A stretch of DNA of 64,000 nucleotides from Vitrella brassicaformis CCMP3155 (taxonomy: Eukaryota; Protista; Chromerida), in the NCBI GenBank assembly GCA_001179505.1, contig CDMY01000376.1, positions 62,001-126,000 on the forward strand. Direction: 5' to 3'. The notes under the pieces are model-generated. The model saw only the letters and a program-made list of their open reading frames with translations. It did no database searches and was not told the origin of the DNA. Numbering within the stretch: the stretch's first letter is position 1; each line of letters begins with the position of its first letter. The translations under genes and the position numbers were made by a program. Below are positions 11,362 through 64,000 of the stretch, one piece after another.

Positions 11362-12169
11362 ATGCAGGTAGACGAGTGTGGTGTGACTAGTTGTCCCGAT
11401 CGGAAGCGGCCCTACCACCAGATGGACCACAATGGCGGTGACCTCAGCCACAACCAGCAGGGAGGAGGAGGAGGACCCTTCGCCAAGCGCCACTCCGCCA
11501 ACACACACAGCCACAATGGCACCAACACCAACAGCAGCAACAGCAACGCCTTCTTCCAGCGCGGTCCACCATCCAGATGCCTCCTGCCTCCGGACTCTGT
11601 CGGTAAGCACACGCGCCTCTCTCTCTCTCCTTCTCTCTCTTTCTGTGTGAGAGAGAGAGATCCACTGACACGGCTGTTGTGTGTTGCTTGGATGGTTTGT
11701 GTGTGACCAGGCTACATAGTGGGCAAGTCGGGTCAGCACATTCGTCAGATCACGGACGATTCGGGCGCGTCCATCGATGTGTCGCGGGACGCCGAGGCGC
11801 CGCCCGACCTCTCAGACAAAATCGTCACCATCAACGGGTCGGTGGGCGGGGGCGCACACACACACACTCACACGAGTGCTTGTGGATGGATGGATGGATG
11901 TGTGTGTGTGTGTGTGTGTGTGTGTGGTTTTCTGCAGGACGCCTCACGCGAAGGAGTCTGCTGTTGGTGCGTTGCTGCGTCGGCTGCGTCAGATCAACAA
12001 GCAGACGATGCAGGAGAGGGGCGTGTTCGTCATCATCATACCCGACAAAAGCGCCCCCGCCATCATCGGCCAGAGGGGGAACACCATCAACGAGCTATGG
12101 TACGTCTTATGCGCCCAGAGAAAGGGAGATGCGCCCACATCCATCCATCCAACCATCTGTGTGTGTTGA

Positions 12170-57914: not shown

Positions 57915-59786
57915 AGAGGGGAGGGGGCAAGGGGGAGGGGGGTGAGAGAGTTTCTTTTCTTGTTTTCGCCTGCCTGCCTGCCTGGCTGCCTGCCTGCCTG
58001 CCGGCCAGTGTTGCTGTTGATAGCTGGTGTACATGAATCATCCATGCCATGGAGGGCAGGCTGGGCTGCCCCCTGGTTGGGTTGTGATGCTGTCTTCTTT
58101 GTTTGTTACTCCCGACCCACATTCGCTTGCTCACGCGCATACATGTATCCCCGTCGGTTCCCGTGGCTCAAGCTTGTGGTGTCACTGCAAGCTGGAGCTG
58201 CGTCAACCGATAGGGATGTGTGTGCTCGGACTTGCCGATGTGGCTACGCTATGGCAAGAGTGTTCTGTTGCATTCTGATGCTGTATCGTCTCGTGCCGTC
58301 ACCGAGTCCCCTTTGCTGGCTCGGCCACATCCGTCGACACCAGGGAACTCCGCTCCCACTTGCCTTGTCAGTGCGAGTTGGGGCTGGGTGACCTGGTGGG
58401 GACTTGTGTGGTGGAGCTATGCTATGGCAAGGACATGTTGTTGTGCTCAGAGGTCGATCGACGAACCTTTTCTGTGTTCAACCATGTACATTTCAGTCGA
58501 ACGAACATGCGAGGAAGGGTCCAGAAAATGTACGTAACGTCCATTAGGCATGCAAATCAGCGCATCCATCCCATCATATGCACGATGCTTGATAAAGTTA
58601 CGTAGTAGTAACGCCTCCCTCCCTCCCCCTTAGTATGACCACAAGCAGAGCATAGTGGCACCCACATGAATGACACCATTCAAGATACATGCTCCTCAGA
58701 AAACAGTGGGGACGGGACGGGTGGTACATGTGACGTTGAAAAAGACACTAGGACGCCACAACACAGTCAGTGATCGATTCAATCCTCCTCTGTCTCTGGT
58801 ACGTGATGCCCTGTACGTACGTCACTGACAAAACCATCCATCTCTCTGTGGGGCGTCCCTCCCTCCTCTCTTGGTGGTCGCAGGAGTGTACAGACAGACA
58901 GACAAGGGAGTGAGTGACGCACGGATTGATGGATGGAAGAGCCTGCCTGCCTGCAGCGTGGCTAGTGTACAGGGCTGCTGATGGTGTGTGTGGGGGACAC
59001 ATACAGTTGACAAAGAGCGAGTTGGCAGTAGGTATTCTGGGCGGATGTACTAGCTGAGCTGACGAACTCCCCCCCCCCCCCCCNNNNNNNNNNNNNNNNN
59101 NNNNNNNNNNNNNNNNNNNNNNNNNNNNNNNNNNNNNNNNNNNNNNNNNNNNNNNNNNNNNNNNNNNNNNNNNNNNNNNNNNNNNNNNNNNNNNNNNNNN
59201 NNNNNNNNNNNNNNNNNNNNNNNNNNNNNNNNNNNNNNNNNNNNNNNNNNNNNNNNNNNNNNNNNNNNNNNNNNNNNNNNNNNNNNNNNNNNNNNNNNNN
59301 NNNNNNNNNNNNNNNNNNNNNNNNNNNNNNNNNNNNNNNNNNNNNNNNNNNNNNNNNNNNNNNNNNNNNNNNNNNNNNNNNNNCCCCCCCCCCCCCCCTC
59401 CCCTCTCCTCCCCTTCCCTCCTCTCTTCTGCATATACACACACAGACACGCAGATCAGCGATTGGGTATAGACGGACGGCTGACACGCACTCATTCATGC
59501 AGCGAATGCCGACTAATCAATCATGTCACGTACGTTGATTGACAAAACGGACAAACGGGCAGACAACATTCGTCGATCGGTATTCATACACGCACAACGT
59601 ATGTATGGAACTATATAAGTATGCATGTAATAAACACACACATGCACACACACAGACAGACAGACAGAAGACCAGCATGCAAGCGACATGCACGAATCCC
59701 TCCCTCCCTTTCTCCCTCCCACCCCCACCCCCACCCCCACCCCCTGTGTGTCTGTGTGTGCACATTCAATTCAATCTACTCACTAC

Positions 59787-62700
59787 TCACCCACCCCCTT
59801 GTGGTATACGATGGCCATACCCCGCCGGTTGCCGTCTGGCCAAGAGTATGGCCTGAATGGTCTGCATATTGCGGTGGCTCTGCTGGTGCAGGGCCTGCAC
59901 GCTGCGATAGAGGGCACCCAACGCGTCGTCAGGCAAAGACTGCAACGCGCTAGGGTTCAACCTGCACACATCCATCCAATCCACACAGACGGACACAAGG
60001 CATGCACTCCTGCTTTGCTGTGCTGTGTTTGTCGGCGTGCGGGAGGGTGTGGGGCTCACTCGCTTTGTATCTGCCTCAGTTCGTTGTCCTTGGCGGCCAG
60101 CAGGGCCTCGGCGTGACGAAGCTGAGCATCGTGATCAACTCTGACACACGGACAGAAGGGACACGTGTGTCGATGCCCCGTCGGTAAGTGCATCCCTTTT
60201 CCCGTCGCTCTCGCTCACACACATTGTCCGTCTGAGTGTTTCGATTTCCTCTGTCGAGCGCACCAGCACGCGGCGGAGGCCCTCACTCTCCTCCCTGTGC
60301 ACCAACGCACAGACACGCAGACAGAGGAATCAGACACACGGATGGATGGATGGACGGACGGCTGCTTGGTTTGCTCACTCGTGCTGCTGCCTCTGATGTA
60401 CGTGCGCCGCCCTCTCCTGGGCTAGCTCCGATGACAGCACCCGACTGACACAGAGAAAATGGGTACAGAAAGATATTCGTCTGCGGGCCTGTGTGTGTGT
60501 GTGTGCGTGTATCACTTACTTGTGTTGCTGGACGGCCTGCAGCCGCGCCACGTCCGATCGGTGCCGCTTGTCACGAGATGTAACGACCTCACTGCAGTGC
60601 ACGGAGGCCATTGACCTCATGTGGTTTGTTTCCATTCCTTCCATTTCTTACACGTATGCCTCGACTTGCTCGACAGCCTTGTGCAGCTTGGCCACCCCCT
60701 CCCGCAGCACACCCTCAATCCTCGACCGCTCCTCCCGCACCTCCTTGGCACCGGGCGTCACCACACCACCGCCACCATGATGCGCACTGCCGTCTGCCGC
60801 CCGTCGATGGTGATGATGCTGCTGTTTGCCCTGCTGCAGCGGGGGGAACGCCGTCTCGCTGTCAAGGTCGATGCGCGGTGTGGTGTAGACTGTCTCGGCG
60901 CGTGAAGATGTGTACAGACCACCCCCAGCGCCCCCTCCAGCCCCTCCCCCCTTGGCCCGCATCTGCGTCTGCATCTGTTGTTCAGCGGTTTCCTCCTCAG
61001 GAATGGGTGAGGGCGGTGAGCGGTTGGGCGGCGTGAACGCGTCGAGATGCAGCCGCAGATAGGCCTGCAGGTCAGTGAGGGCCCGGAGTGGTGGTGAGCG
61101 GGGCGTGTCGTCCCCCTCTCCCCCTCCCCGTCCCCCTCCCTCTCCCTCCTGCTGCTGCTGATGGTGCTGGTGTTGGTGGTCCTGTATCGGCAGCTGGAAT
61201 GGGCCGACAACGGTTGGCGTGGGGTCGTTCTCGGCGGTAGGTGATGTCTGCGACAGTGCTGGTGGGTCGGCAGGGACTGCCAGCGGTGTGTCGTGGTCCT
61301 GGTCTCCCTCACGGTGGCCATCGTCATCATCATCGTGACGCAACATGTCCAAACGAAGCTCCTCTGACGCCTGATGATACCCGACACACACACGCCGACA
61401 GTGCACACCTCCATCCATCCAGCCAGCCATCCATCCATCCATCTAGCCACCCTTCTTTGCTCTTACATGTCCGAAGATCTCGGCCAGCAGGGCATCCTCC
61501 TCACCCACACCCACACCGGCCCCATTCCTGGACCCACGCGAGCCGGGCCGAGCAGGCGCCATACCACCAACCGCAGGCGGCAGCGGCAGCCGCACCCCAG
61601 CGTCGGGAATCGACGCACTCGATGACGCATGCTCATGCTCGCCTGTCCGCGCGCCCCCCTCCTGTTTTGCTTCCTCTGCGTTGGTCTGGTGCGATGGGTC
61701 TCTGCCGTTGACGGGCAGCGGACTGAGCAGGAAGGGCCAGGCGTGACGCGAGTCACCCGTGCAGAAGCCGGAGAACGACGCGGAAGGGGTGGACGCTTGC
61801 GGCTGTTGGTTGCTGCCGTTCCCATCCGTCCACTGGTGCGGGTGGTCCAGACCCACCTCCACCTCCACCTCTCCCTCCCCCTCTGCCTCGCCGTCGCCGT
61901 CAATGTCATCATCCCACCCATCGGCATCCTTGTCGTGTTCGTCCTCATCGAGCTGGTCGTCATCGATGGAGGGCTGGTGTCGTGAGTCGGCCGCACTGGA
62001 TGAGGACACCGGCAGGCGGCCCAGCACGGGGGTGTTGCGACGCCTCGCCTGGCGTGCGCCCTCGGCCGGGGTCAGGTTGGGCTCGCCCTGACCAAGAAGG
62101 GCAGACAAAAGCAAAGCGGTATGTGTGGTGGATGGGGTGAGTGTTCCGTCATTTGGTCGCGTACCTCGTCCCAGAGGTGTAGCTGTCTGCGCCACAGTCG
62201 CACACGGCTGTCAAAATGACGCTTGGGACAGCACTGCAGTGCACATGAGAAAGGGCGGACACACGCAGGAGAGAGTGTGGTGTGGTGTGGTGTGTCCACA
62301 GACATACGTACTTATCCATCCATCCATCCATCCATGTATGTATCTCTCTCTGTATACCTCGTGTATGTTGGGTGTTTGTGGGTGCAGACTGTCGCTCCAG
62401 TGGGGCTTGCGGCGGTCCTTAGGCACATGGGCACTGTACTGACGATACCCCTCCGTGTCCTGCAGGACAGACACACACACACACACACACACACACCGAC
62501 ACGAGCACACGAATGAGTGCCGCACCCACCGCATACGTGCAGTGAAGTGCAGGAAAGCCATACAATCCTGATGGCCCGTGGTTGTGTATTGATTGAGTCT
62601 TGGCTCGCTCACCTTCCCAATCTCAATCTGCCGGCCGCGCTGTAACAGACGATGCTCATCCAACTCTGAAATGACCATAAATGCACGCACGTCAATCACA

Positions 62701-63349
62701 CACTCATGATCCATGCCGACCTCCCTCCCTCCCTCCCTCCCTCCCTCCCTCTCTCCCTCTCTCTCCTTCTCCCTGACCTTTTGGCTGGGCCCCGCCAGAA
62801 AATCTCCGCCCGCGAAACCTCCTAGGGCTCGTATACCCCCCTCCAGCTCCCCCTCCCCCTCTCCGCCCGACCAATCCATATCCAGACCGGCGCGTGGCCG
62901 CATGATGATGATGGTGGGTGAACCCGCCGCCCCCTCGTCGATATGGCGTACCGTTGCCGTCGTCAGGCGACCCGCCGCCATAGGATGACCGCTTGGCGGG
63001 GGAGCGGTGGTGCTCTGACGAGTCGTCGGTGCGGCGCCGGCTGTCGCCCTCTGTCCTGCGCGTGGTGGGTGCAACAGGAGTGTGATCAACCTGTGTGTGA
63101 CGTGACACACACAAAACATCAATCAGACATAAAAGACATATCAAGCATACGTACGTCAGACTGCCTATCTCGACCACTCACTCGTGCAGGCCAGCCAGGC
63201 ACATGCAATGCAGTCAGTGCAGGTCTTTAACCCACCTAACCCACCTGGTGCTTGCTACTAGTGTTGGCAGGCTGCAGCCGGGGCCACGTATCATCCTCCT
63301 CCTTCTGATCATCGCCGCCAGCGCTCCGCCCGAGTGCGCCCCCGGACAT
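59787..63349 (-). CDS. SLBP RNA-binding-domain protein with an RG-rich N-terminus, acidic middle and C-terminal coiled coil
   Basis: Exons 62613-62665, 62358-62459 and 62165-62233 give ELDEHRLLQRGRQIEIGK|DTEGYRQYSAHVPKDRRKPHWSDSLHPQTPNIHE|CCPKRHFDSRVRLWRRQLHLWDE, matching the SLBP RBD. Downstream exons join in phase; one junction near 60150-60230 is ambiguous. Confidence 0.85.
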
Positions 63350-64000
63350 AATGATCACGAAGCCGCAGACCTCGCTATTCAACCGCCGGGCACACCAAGG
63401 CCGATAATACCGCCATCAGAACGCATCAGGACGAAATGGGACGGGCAGATGATGCTGAATGCACTCGAATCCGGCTGTCTGCTCTTGGCGGTCGGCTTGT
63501 CAGTCGAGTGTTGGGGCAGCTGTGGCGACAATCTGTGGTTGCGATGGTGACAAACGCTTCGTGGATGCGCGGGATGCACACCGATAATGCTGAAGGGTGC
63601 TCTCGACGGGCGGGCTTCACGAGTACTTGCCCTGCACGTCCTCCAGCAGCGCTCCGTGCCACCGCCAAGGTCCAACGAGCGCTGCCCTCGGATCGAAGCG
63701 GGCTCGAAGCTCGCAACCAAGAAGGGAGAAAAGGAGGGAGAAAGAGGAGAAGAAAGCGAGCGTGTTCTCTTTATCTTCGCTTGTGATCTGTCAATCCCGT
63801 CGTCTTCACTTCCGGTCGGCACTTGCTGATGCATCACAGATGACCCGTCGGCAGCGCACGACAGCAGCAACTAGTATCGTCCCGTTTTGACCATTTTGAA
63901 TTCATCCTATCATCTTACTTATTCGTTCTCCCTTCTGAATCACGTGACCGACGTCAATTGCGTCTAGCCATCTGGTTTGATGGGGCTGTCCTTCTGCCAA

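What the first reader, a model, noticed from the sequence alone, without database searches (positions are those of the whole stretch)
59787..63349. Histone stem-loop binding protein (SLBP) domain hidden in three micro-exons, on an unusually extended protein
Seen: the spliced RBD (QRGRQIEIGKDTEGYRQY...HPQTPN...KRHFDSRVRLWRRQLHLWD) matches human SLBP (RRQKQINYGKNTIAYDRY...HPKTPN...RRSWDQQIKLWKVALHFWD), including the TPN phospho-Thr site. It is preceded by an RG/RGG-rich segment and followed by several hundred residues: an acidic tract, Pro/Gln linkers and a coiled coil ending LNPSALQSLPDDALGALY. Known: metazoan SLBP is ~270 aa with a short post-RBD tail and serves non-polyadenylated histone mRNAs; protist homologs have been reported bioinformatically but are little studied. 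Inference: stem-loop-based histone mRNA control in chromerids, with a novel oligomerisation/scaffold C-terminus.
Basis: partly seen in the sequence, partly recalled or inferred. Interest (0 to 1): 0.72.

Follow-up and report, generated by a model that had tools for sequence, protein, structure and literature searches.

The report
Long, dimer-forming SLBP homologue in Vitrella
This is a real, expressed gene of the alga Vitrella brassicaformis for a histone-mRNA stem-loop binding protein (SLBP) about three times longer than the animal one; the domain is already in public annotation, so the new points are modest: a predicted self-pairing helical tail and a matching, unusual stem-loop behind the core histone genes.

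Summary
Observation confirmed. On the minus strand, 63349-59787 holds a 12-exon gene (all GT..AG) for an 815-aa protein. Three small exons (53, 102 and 69 nt) encode a complete SLBP RNA-binding domain. Pfam PF15247 scores 38 and 29 bits on the exon pieces and 85.8 bits on the public 757-aa protein. Human SLBP (4L8R) matches at E 2.5e-12, with the Arg181 equivalent and Thr-Pro-Asn kept. One spliced contig joins all exons, so the coiled-coil exons belong to this gene.

The gene is already annotated in Vitrella brassicaformis CCMP3155 as an SLBP-domain protein. That model skips the 58-aa RGG segment, which the RNA contig retains.

The C-terminal extension has no relatives outside Vitrella. It is predicted to be a 115-residue helix forming a parallel homodimer (ipSAE 0.52; best control 0.00).

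The inference is partly supported. RF00032 and U7 searches find nothing. A divergent hairpin (UGGUGCC-ACUG-GGCRCCA) lies 323-346 nt behind H2A, H3 and H4 genes and behind an H2B gene. An earlier scan note on other DNA of this genome gave this lead.

The genome has a second clear SLBP paralogue (contig C310) and two weak ones, so which one serves histone mRNAs is open. New member of a known kind; moderate interest.

The parts
63245..63349 (-). Exon 1, with the start codon at 63349 (aa 1-35)
   Evidence: In-frame TGA upstream at 63418-63416. Junction 63088/63243 seen in a spliced contig.
62778..63090 (-). Exon 2 (aa 36-139). Its 3' part, 62952-62779, encodes the 58-aa RG/RGG- and His-rich segment.
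   Evidence: Contig X5 record 6 is continuous over 62779-63088. The public model P0001 splices this segment out. No Pfam family matches.
62613..62665 (-). Exon 3 (53 nt): start of the SLBP RNA-binding domain
   Evidence: PF15247 match in the frame window:62358-62681. The contig record spacing of 55 nt fits this exon.
62358..62459 (-). Exon 4 (102 nt): middle of the RNA-binding domain, ending with the H-P-Q-T-P-N motif
   Evidence: PF15247 profile positions 18-46. Contig piece 62358-62458. Alignment to human SLBP with T171-P-N kept.
62165..62233 (-). Exon 5 (69 nt): last helix of the RNA-binding domain, with the equivalents of Arg181, Trp190, His195 and Trp197
   Evidence: PF15247 positions 49-70, 29.4 bits. 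PDB alignments. Junction 62086/62164.
61467..62087 (-). Exon 6 (aa 215-421): a basic linker, the acidic tract (61842-61967; 22 D+E in 42 aa), then a Gly/Pro-rich low-complexity region
   Evidence: No Pfam family over threshold. Contig piece 61466-62086.
60652..61370 (-). Exon 7 (aa 422-660): acidic and His/Gln-rich low-complexity region. It includes a module at 60813-61136 shared with a second Vitrella protein. The long helix starts at about 60704.
   Evidence: Junctions 61369/61466 and 60591/60652.
60060..60591 (-). Exons 8-11 (60591-60520, 60444-60379, 60294-60223, 60140-60060): the rest of the ~115-residue helix predicted to form a parallel dimeric coiled coil
   Evidence: Junctions in runs X6, X5 and X1. 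AlphaFold2 helix with pLDDT above 90. Homodimer ipSAE 0.52 against a best control of 0.00.
59787..59961 (-). Exon 12: helix break (N-P-S-A-L...), a second helix, a short Gly-rich tail and the stop codon ending at 59787
   Evidence: Contig piece 59783-59959. No Pfam family.

Best explanation
The gene encodes a genuine, expressed member of the SLBP family. Its parts are an RGG-rich N-terminal segment, a complete three-helix SLBP RNA-binding domain, an acidic tract, about 400 residues of low-complexity linker, and a C-terminal helix of about 115 residues that pairs in parallel with a second copy. Shown here: the domain, the single spliced transcript, and the absence of relatives for the extension. 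Inferred: the domain binds the 5' arm of the Vitrella-type histone hairpin (7-bp stem UGGUGCC/GGCRCCA, loop ACUG, 3' flank ACCAY). That hairpin keeps a G at the second position of the 6-bp GGUGCC core (third of the 7-bp stem), the only base that human SLBP reads specifically through Arg181, and Arg181 is kept here. The hairpin lies about 330 nt behind an H2A, an H3 and an H4 gene, and about 500 nt behind an H2B gene. As a coiled-coil dimer the protein would carry two RNA-binding domains. It would act in 3'-end formation, stability or translation of these mRNAs, apparently without a recognisable U7 snRNA. The Thr-Pro-Asn motif suggests regulation by phosphorylation, as in animals.
For: The gene model and one spliced contig cover all 12 exons. 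PF15247 is over its cut-off on the exon pieces and reaches 85.8 bits on the public protein. The alignment to human and fly SLBP structures keeps the equivalents of K146, Y151, Y154, T171-P-N, R181, W190, H195 and W197. The role of Arg181 with G7, and of Thr171, is taken from PMC10388802. The hairpin has 16 genomic copies at up to 2 mismatches, against 0-3 matches (at up to 3 mismatches) for the reversed pattern. Copies lie behind H2A and H2B (C531), H3 (C599) and H4 (C47). It is in the lowest-energy or centroid fold in all four cases, shortened to 5 bp at H4. Its only variable stem position switches between U.G and U-A. The variant histone genes I located (H2A.Z, the H2A.X-like family, other H3 copies, a second H2B) carry no copy. 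This echoes the animal split between stem-loop and polyadenylated histone genes. The C-terminus is predicted as a long helix. The predicted homodimer scores 0.52 against 0.00 for the best of 3 controls, with 100% contact agreement between runs and partner pLDDT 82. That mark was reached by 21 of 30 proteins solved as pairs of one chain and by 0 of 23 solved as single chains; on eukaryotes by 17 of 29 solved as pairs, but by only 1 of the 7 with no older solved relative.
Against: No binding was measured. A second paralogue (C310) has an RNA-binding domain closer to the Pfam profile and about 61% identical to this one, with the same key residues. It could be the histone SLBP instead, or in addition. 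The hairpin differs from the canonical one: the loop is ACUG rather than UYUN, the 5' flank is pyrimidine-rich, and it is far from the stop codon. RF00032 does not score it. The Tyr144 and Arg137 equivalents are changed to Ile and Gln. An earlier scan note reports H2A mRNA polyadenylated well past the hairpin (s1-233271, not retested). Coiled-coil dimer predictions can pass easily, and the test was calibrated mainly on microbes.
Confidence: 0.55

Rival explanations
1. Division of labour between paralogues. The C310 gene is the histone SLBP. This long protein is a specialised copy that binds other hairpin-bearing RNAs, such as transcripts of the ~10-copy dispersed repeat that ends in the same hairpin. 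Alternatively it acts at another step, such as storage or translation in RNP granules, using its RGG segment, disordered linker and dimeric coiled coil as a scaffold.
For: The C310 domain is closer to the family profile (56.4 + 33.3 bits against 38 + 29.4). Ten hairpin copies sit at the 3' end of a ~500-nt repeat that does not look coding, mostly with the U-A variant of the stem. RGG segments, low-complexity regions and coiled coils are typical of RNP scaffold proteins (general knowledge). Animals with two SLBPs also divide roles, as in zebrafish slbp2 (PMC6239174, abstract).
Against: The two domains share every residue I could score as important, so nothing in the sequence separates their RNA specificity. 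The C310 protein's full architecture and expression were not obtained. It is not shown that the repeat family is transcribed.
Confidence: 0.3
2. The SLBP-like domain no longer binds RNA hairpins. The protein is a structural or scaffold protein unrelated to histone mRNA.
For: The Tyr144 and Arg137 equivalents are replaced, there is a 4-residue insertion in the loop before the T-P-N motif, and Lys174 of TPNK is Ile.
Against: The whole domain scores 85.8 bits, with Arg181, His195 and the Trp residues kept. The same substitutions and insertion occur in the paralogue, so they are lineage features and not decay. A cognate-looking hairpin is conserved in the genome.
Confidence: 0.07
3. Gene-model artefact: two adjacent genes (an SLBP gene and a coiled-coil gene) merged by assembly of overlapping transcripts.
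For: Logan contigs can run across two genes. The same contig does continue 3.4 kb past the 5' end, most likely into the divergent 7TM-RGS neighbour.
Against: The exon 7 to exon 8 junction (60652/60591, GT..AG) is seen in three runs and keeps the frame open with no stop. If unspliced, exon 7 would end two codons later, with no room for a separate promoter or start codon. The independent public model also joins both parts.
Confidence: 0.03

Closest known systems
Metazoan SLBP (human SLBP, PDB 4L8R/4QOZ; Drosophila SLBP, 4TUW/4TUX)
   Same: It has the ~70-residue three-helix RNA-binding domain (E 2.5e-12 to human). The equivalents of Arg181, the Thr-Pro-Asn motif, His195, Trp190 and Trp197 are kept. 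Acidic residues follow the domain.
   Different: It is 815 aa, against about 270 in animals. It has an RGG-rich segment in front and a long disordered linker behind. It has a predicted dimeric coiled coil at the C-terminus. Tyr144 becomes Ile and Lys174 becomes Ile, and there is a 4-residue loop insertion. No U7 snRNA was detectable in the genome. According to 10.64898/2026.10.14.759114, no SLIP1-binding motif is expected outside animals; I did not test this here.
Protist SLBP homologues and their histone stem-loops (Davila Lopez and Samuelsson 2008, cited from memory and through PMC7854901; Perkinsus in PMC6723414; survey in 10.64898/2026.10.14.759114)
   Same: An SLBP domain co-occurs with a hairpin behind the core histone genes in an alveolate. 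The hairpin is divergent in sequence and lies further from the stop codon than in animals.
   Different: The Vitrella hairpin lies 323-346 nt downstream and is not scored by RF00032. A survey of the first 300 nt with that model would therefore miss it. No relative of the coiled-coil extension was found in any other organism.
Second Vitrella SLBP paralogue (contig C310:78925-79250)
   Same: The RNA-binding domain is about 61% identical. It has the same loop insertion, the same intron position after I-H-E, and an Arg-rich region upstream.
   Different: It lacks the intron after I-G-K, has T-P-S in place of T-P-N, and its downstream sequence is different. No relative of this gene's exon 7 lies at C310.
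SLIP1 homodimer bridging SLBP to other factors (PMC3763545)
   Same: It presents two SLBP-linked binding sites in one twofold-symmetric assembly.
   Different: In animals the dimer is a separate MIF4G-like protein bound to an N-terminal SLBP motif. Here the dimerisation would be built into SLBP itself through a coiled coil. This is an analogy only; there is no sequence relation.

Membership tests
SLBP family (Pfam PF15247, SLBP_RNA_bind) | The ~70-residue RNA-binding domain matches the family profile above the curated cut-off | tested here: met
   38 and 29.4 bits on the exon pieces, and 85.8 bits (E 2.1e-24, profile positions 2-70 of 70) on the public protein, against a cut-off of 27.
SLBP family (Pfam PF15247, SLBP_RNA_bind) | The arginine equivalent to human Arg181, the only base-specific contact (to G7 of the stem) | tested here: met
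   K-R aligns to R180-R181. The role of Arg181 is taken from PMC10388802.
SLBP family (Pfam PF15247, SLBP_RNA_bind) | The TPNK motif with the phospho-acceptor Thr171 | tested here: met
   T-P-N is kept and Lys174 is Ile. Phosphorylation itself cannot be tested with these tools.
SLBP family (Pfam PF15247, SLBP_RNA_bind) | A cognate stem-loop behind replication-type histone genes | tested here: inconclusive
   The canonical RF00032 element is absent. A divergent 7-bp/4-nt hairpin with a 3' ACC flank lies behind H2A, H2B, H3 and H4 genes. Whether the mRNAs end there was not tested.
SLBP family (Pfam PF15247, SLBP_RNA_bind) | High-affinity binding to the histone hairpin | not testable with these tools
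   This needs a gel-shift or fluorescence-polarisation assay with recombinant domain.
Metazoan-type U7-dependent histone 3'-end processing | U7 snRNA present in the genome | tested here: not met
   RF00066 gives no match at E <= 10 in the 72.7-Mb assembly. Only 65 of about 4200 first-look candidates were scored, so a divergent U7 is not excluded.
Metazoan-type U7-dependent histone 3'-end processing | Lsm10, Lsm11 and FLASH present; SLIP1-binding motif in the SLBP N-terminus | not tested
   No specific profile was at hand. The generic LSM family would not tell Lsm10/11 from other Sm proteins.
Parallel dimeric coiled coil | A long uninterrupted helix with in-register a/d-type contacts between two copies | tested here: met
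   The helix covers residues 586-700 of P0001 with pLDDT above 90. The homodimer model scores ipSAE 0.52 against 0.00 for the best control. Contacts recur every 3-4 residues and pair equal positions such as 634 with 634 and 669 with 669. This is a prediction only.

The most novel reading that the evidence does not exclude
Vitrella uses a constitutively dimeric SLBP. The built-in coiled coil holds two RNA-binding domains together and, with the RGG segment, replaces the separate adaptor dimer (SLIP1) and perhaps part of the U7 machinery of animals. The protein would clamp two hairpin-bearing RNAs, or couple the distant 3' hairpin to other mRNP factors. It would serve both histone mRNAs and a family of non-histone transcripts that end in the same hairpin.
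Probability: 0.2. Interest if true: 0.55.

Novelty: new member of a known kind. Interest (0 to 1): 0.35.

Why it matters
Chromerids are the free-living photosynthetic relatives of malaria and Toxoplasma parasites, and how alveolates end and control their histone mRNAs is little studied. This locus, with the hairpin behind the H2A, H2B, H3 and H4 genes, gives a concrete protein-RNA pair to test in a lineage without a recognisable U7 snRNA. It also shows that surveys limited to 300 nt downstream and to the Rfam model would miss the hairpin. The predicted dimeric tail, if real, would be a lineage-specific way of making SLBP bivalent. None of this overturns current views: SLBP and histone stem-loops outside animals are already documented, and this protein is already annotated by its domain.

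Tried and rejected
1. RF00032 over the whole genome gave a best score of 18.1 bits. None of the 7 matches lies behind a histone gene, and one perfect 16-nt canonical core on C559 has no histone ORF upstream.
2. All Rfam families over 17 histone loci, and then over the 4 hairpin loci, gave no Histone3 match.
3. My first hairpin scan required U at loop positions 1 and 3. It was flooded by (TG)n repeats and missed the real element. The earlier scan note s1-233271 made me look again.
4. A 27-nt element behind H2A.X-like genes was considered as the SLBP target. I set it aside because it folds weakly (z -0.6 to -1.6) and is absent from the H3, H4 and H2B genes.
5. H4 could not be found with PF15511 or PF00125. 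It was found through the hairpin.
6. Word searches with the RNA-binding domain and with the C-terminal region of P0001 returned only P0001 itself. These searches see only proteins of 416-1325 aa that share 5-residue words.
7. A search with a post-RBD ORF of the C310 paralogue found nothing, so its full architecture stays unknown.
8. The ESM Atlas look-alikes of the C-terminus are generic helical proteins.
9. phmmer of exons 3+4 against PDB, with the translated intron in place, gave only a spurious Cys/Val-repeat match.
10. Davila Lopez and Samuelsson 2008 and Tan et al. 2013 are not held in the library. The role of Tyr144 is therefore left unassessed.
11. Joined step left out: the 815-aa spliced model was built only inside scripts, for translation and for comparison with P0001. 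It was never sent to a search or folding tool. Exons were searched by reference, and full-length work used the public protein P0001.
Full report
**Identity of the sequence**

The window is G000:C376:62001-126000 of a 72.7-Mb assembly in 1064 contigs. The protein of this gene is on record as Vitrella brassicaformis CCMP3155.

**Gene model**

Reading the minus strand and joining candidate exons in a script gives 12 exons. All have GT..AG borders and the frame stays open throughout:
- 63349-63245
- 63090-62778
- 62665-62613
- 62459-62358
- 62233-62165
- 62087-61467
- 61370-60652
- 60591-60520
- 60444-60379
- 60294-60223
- 60140-60060
- 59961-59787

The product has 815 aa. An in-frame TGA at 63418-63416 lies upstream of the ATG.

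**Transcript evidence**

No run is on record as RNA, but runs X5, X6 and X1 hold spliced contigs while X7 holds unspliced DNA.
- Seven junctions are listed directly. The rest follow from the spacing of pieces within contig X5 record 6 (6466 nt), which covers 59783 to beyond 63950.
- The exon 7 to exon 8 junction (60652/60591) links the long middle exon to the coiled-coil micro-exons. It is seen in three runs.
- The contig runs 3.4 kb further at the 5' end. The DNA there holds a divergent plus-strand membrane-protein gene that starts at about 63977. Another scan note calls it a 7TM-RGS protein. I read the extension as a merge of overlapping, unstranded transcripts. That is an inference.

**The domain**

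- PF15247 (SLBP_RNA_bind) matches the exon 3 + exon 4 frame at 38 bits and exon 5 at 29.4 bits, against a cut-off of 27.
- A phmmer search of exon 7 against 1.84 billion representative proteins returned the public protein of this gene, P0001 (757 aa).
- P0001 scores 85.8 bits (E 2.1e-24) over the whole profile. UniRef names it as a histone RNA hairpin-binding domain protein.
- P0001 equals my model minus 58 residues. The annotators used an internal donor after D-D-G-N and so removed the RG/RGG- and His-rich segment. The RNA contig is continuous through that segment.

**Alignment to solved SLBP structures**

Against solved structures the domain aligns to human SLBP (4L8R_C/4QOZ, E 2.5e-12) and to fly SLBP. 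In human numbering:
- Kept: K146, Y151, Y154, T171-P172-N173, R181, W190, H195, W197.
- Changed: R137 to Q, Y144 to I, K174 to I, R180 to K.
- Four residues are inserted before the H-P-x-T-P motif.

Arg181 makes the only base-specific contacts, to G7 of the stem. Thr171 phosphorylation raises affinity 7- to 11-fold (PMC10388802).

**The rest of the protein**

- Composition by segment: the RGG segment has 12 K+R, 18 G and no acidic residue. The tract at 255-296 has 22 D+E in 42 residues. The middle region is rich in Gly, Pro, Gln and His.
- No Pfam family matches outside the RNA-binding domain.
- The exon 7 search found only one other protein, P0002 (955 aa, no Pfam family, gene on contig C507). 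It shares a module of about 104 aa at 77% identity.
- The C-terminal 173 residues found only P0001 itself in the word search. The extension is therefore lineage-specific as far as these searches reach.
- AlphaFold2 without an alignment predicts one helix over residues 586-700 of P0001 (pLDDT mostly above 90), a break at N-P-S-A-L, and a second helix at 711-742.
- Two copies of residues 585-757 were folded together. The score was 0.52 against a best control of 0.00, with 100% contact agreement between runs and partner pLDDT 82.
- That mark was reached by 21 of 30 proteins solved as pairs of one chain and by 0 of 23 solved as single chains.
- On eukaryotes it was reached by 17 of 29 solved as pairs, but by only 1 of the 7 with no older solved relative. 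The contacts are in register and recur every 3-4 residues.
- This supports a parallel dimeric coiled coil but does not show it.

**Paralogues**

A six-frame PF15247 search of the genome finds a second clear gene at C310:78925-79250.
- It scores 56.4 and 33.3 bits on its two exons.
- It is about 61% identical in the domain and has the same loop insertion and the same intron after I-H-E.
- Two weak candidates lie on C281 and C113.

**The RNA side**

- RF00032 finds nothing above 18 bits in the genome and nothing behind histone genes. RF00066 (U7) finds nothing.
- All histone genes I located contain introns.
- The earlier scan note s1-233271, on other DNA of this genome, reported a divergent hairpin behind H2A and H2B.
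- Re-reading the 3' flanks, I found the same element behind H3 (C599) and H2A (C531).
- A genome-wide pattern search gave 16 copies at up to 2 mismatches. The reversed control pattern gave 0 and 3 matches at up to 3 mismatches.
- Copies lie 346 nt after the H2A stop codon, 323 nt after H3 and 335 nt after H4 (C47). One lies behind the H2B gene that is divergently paired with H2A on C531.
- The element is U-GGUGCC, loop ACUG, GGC(G/A)CC-A, followed by ACCAY-GUGA. It is invariant across copies except for the G/A position, which switches a U.G pair to U-A. It is the lowest-energy or centroid fold in all four cases, shortened to 5 bp at H4.
- It keeps G at the second position of the 6-bp GGUGCC core (third of the 7-bp stem) and the ACC flank of the animal element. 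It is still not scored by RF00032.
- The variant genes carry no copy: H2A.Z, the H2A.X-like family, two other H3 genes and a second H2B.
- The recent survey 10.64898/2026.10.14.759114 scanned 300 nt downstream of histone genes, starting from RF00032. It would probably miss these sites.
- In related alveolates, Perkinsus has histone stem-loops (PMC6723414). Toxoplasma canonical histone mRNAs behave as non-polyadenylated (PMC7854901).

**Reading**

The protein is an SLBP family member beyond reasonable doubt, and a cognate-looking hairpin exists. Two things remain inferences: that this paralogue, and not the C310 one, serves histone mRNAs, and that those mRNAs end at the hairpin. I put the histone-hairpin-binding dimer reading at 0.55 and a specialised-paralogue reading at 0.30.

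**Limits**

- The joined 815-aa model was used only inside scripts.
- Read laying was given 4501 letters.
- Lsm10, Lsm11 and FLASH were not searched.
- Chromera was not examined.

Noticed in passing
L049-L060 (for example G000:C602:25078-25098 and C302:28487-28507): Ten copies of a dispersed, roughly 500-nt conserved unit end in the histone-type hairpin, mostly with the U-A stem variant. Each is followed by a shared G-T-G-A-C-C-T-C-T-G-C-C-A-T-G-C-C flank. No consistent reading frame is visible. It could be a non-coding RNA or a mobile-element family that uses a histone-like 3' end.
   Followed up: partly
G000:C370:4978-5004 and 11624-11650, C497:25394-25420, C530:27115-27141, C723:21421-21447, C1063:4115-4141; also C217, C243, C336: A 27-nt element (GGCGTAGCGGCGATTTTGCTGACAGCC) occurs 9 times in the genome, against 0 for the reversed control. 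Six copies lie 50-260 nt behind the stop codons of H2A.X-like and H2A-variant paralogues. Three lie in a shared repeat context elsewhere. It folds only weakly.
   Followed up: partly
window 60813-61136 and L067 (G000:C507:20296-20628): About 104 aa of exon 7 recur at 77-78% identity inside an unrelated 955-aa Vitrella protein (P0002, no Pfam family) on another contig. This is a two-copy module or a segmental exon duplication.
   Followed up: partly
window 62779-62952: The public gene model (757 aa) splices out the 58-aa RGG/His-rich segment at an internal donor. The spliced RNA contig retains it. This is either an alternative isoform or an annotation error.
   Followed up: partly
window 59088-59382: An assembly gap (a run of N) flanked by poly-G on both sides lies about 400 nt beyond the gene's stop codon. 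The 3' UTR and the downstream neighbour cannot be read through it.
   Followed up: no
window 60909-60994 and 60931: Run X6 (a different sample, 2013) carries 8 substitutions and a 12-nt deletion in the Gly-rich part of exon 7, at 96% identity. This fits strain or allelic variation in a low-complexity stretch.
   Followed up: no
L047 (G000:C876:12429-12449) and L057 (G000:C405:88899-88919): Two more hairpin copies were found. One lies in a partial duplicate of the H2A last exon and 3' region, placed behind an unrelated ORF. The other lies behind a Lys/Arg/Glu-rich ORF that is not an obvious histone.
   Followed up: no
window 63977-64000 and L034:977-2419 (plus strand): A divergently transcribed membrane-protein gene starts about 630 nt upstream of the SLBP start codon. 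Another scan note calls it 7TM-RGS. The transcript contig of the SLBP gene runs on into it.
   Followed up: partly
L005 (G000:C281:130570-130936) and L006 (G000:C113:84787-84873): Two further weak SLBP-like domain fragments are present (21.9 + 14.3 bits and 19.3 bits, each below the cut-off). They contain a G-Y-Q-N-Y-R stretch, and the C281 one also has H-T-P-K. They may be divergent third and fourth family members.
   Followed up: no
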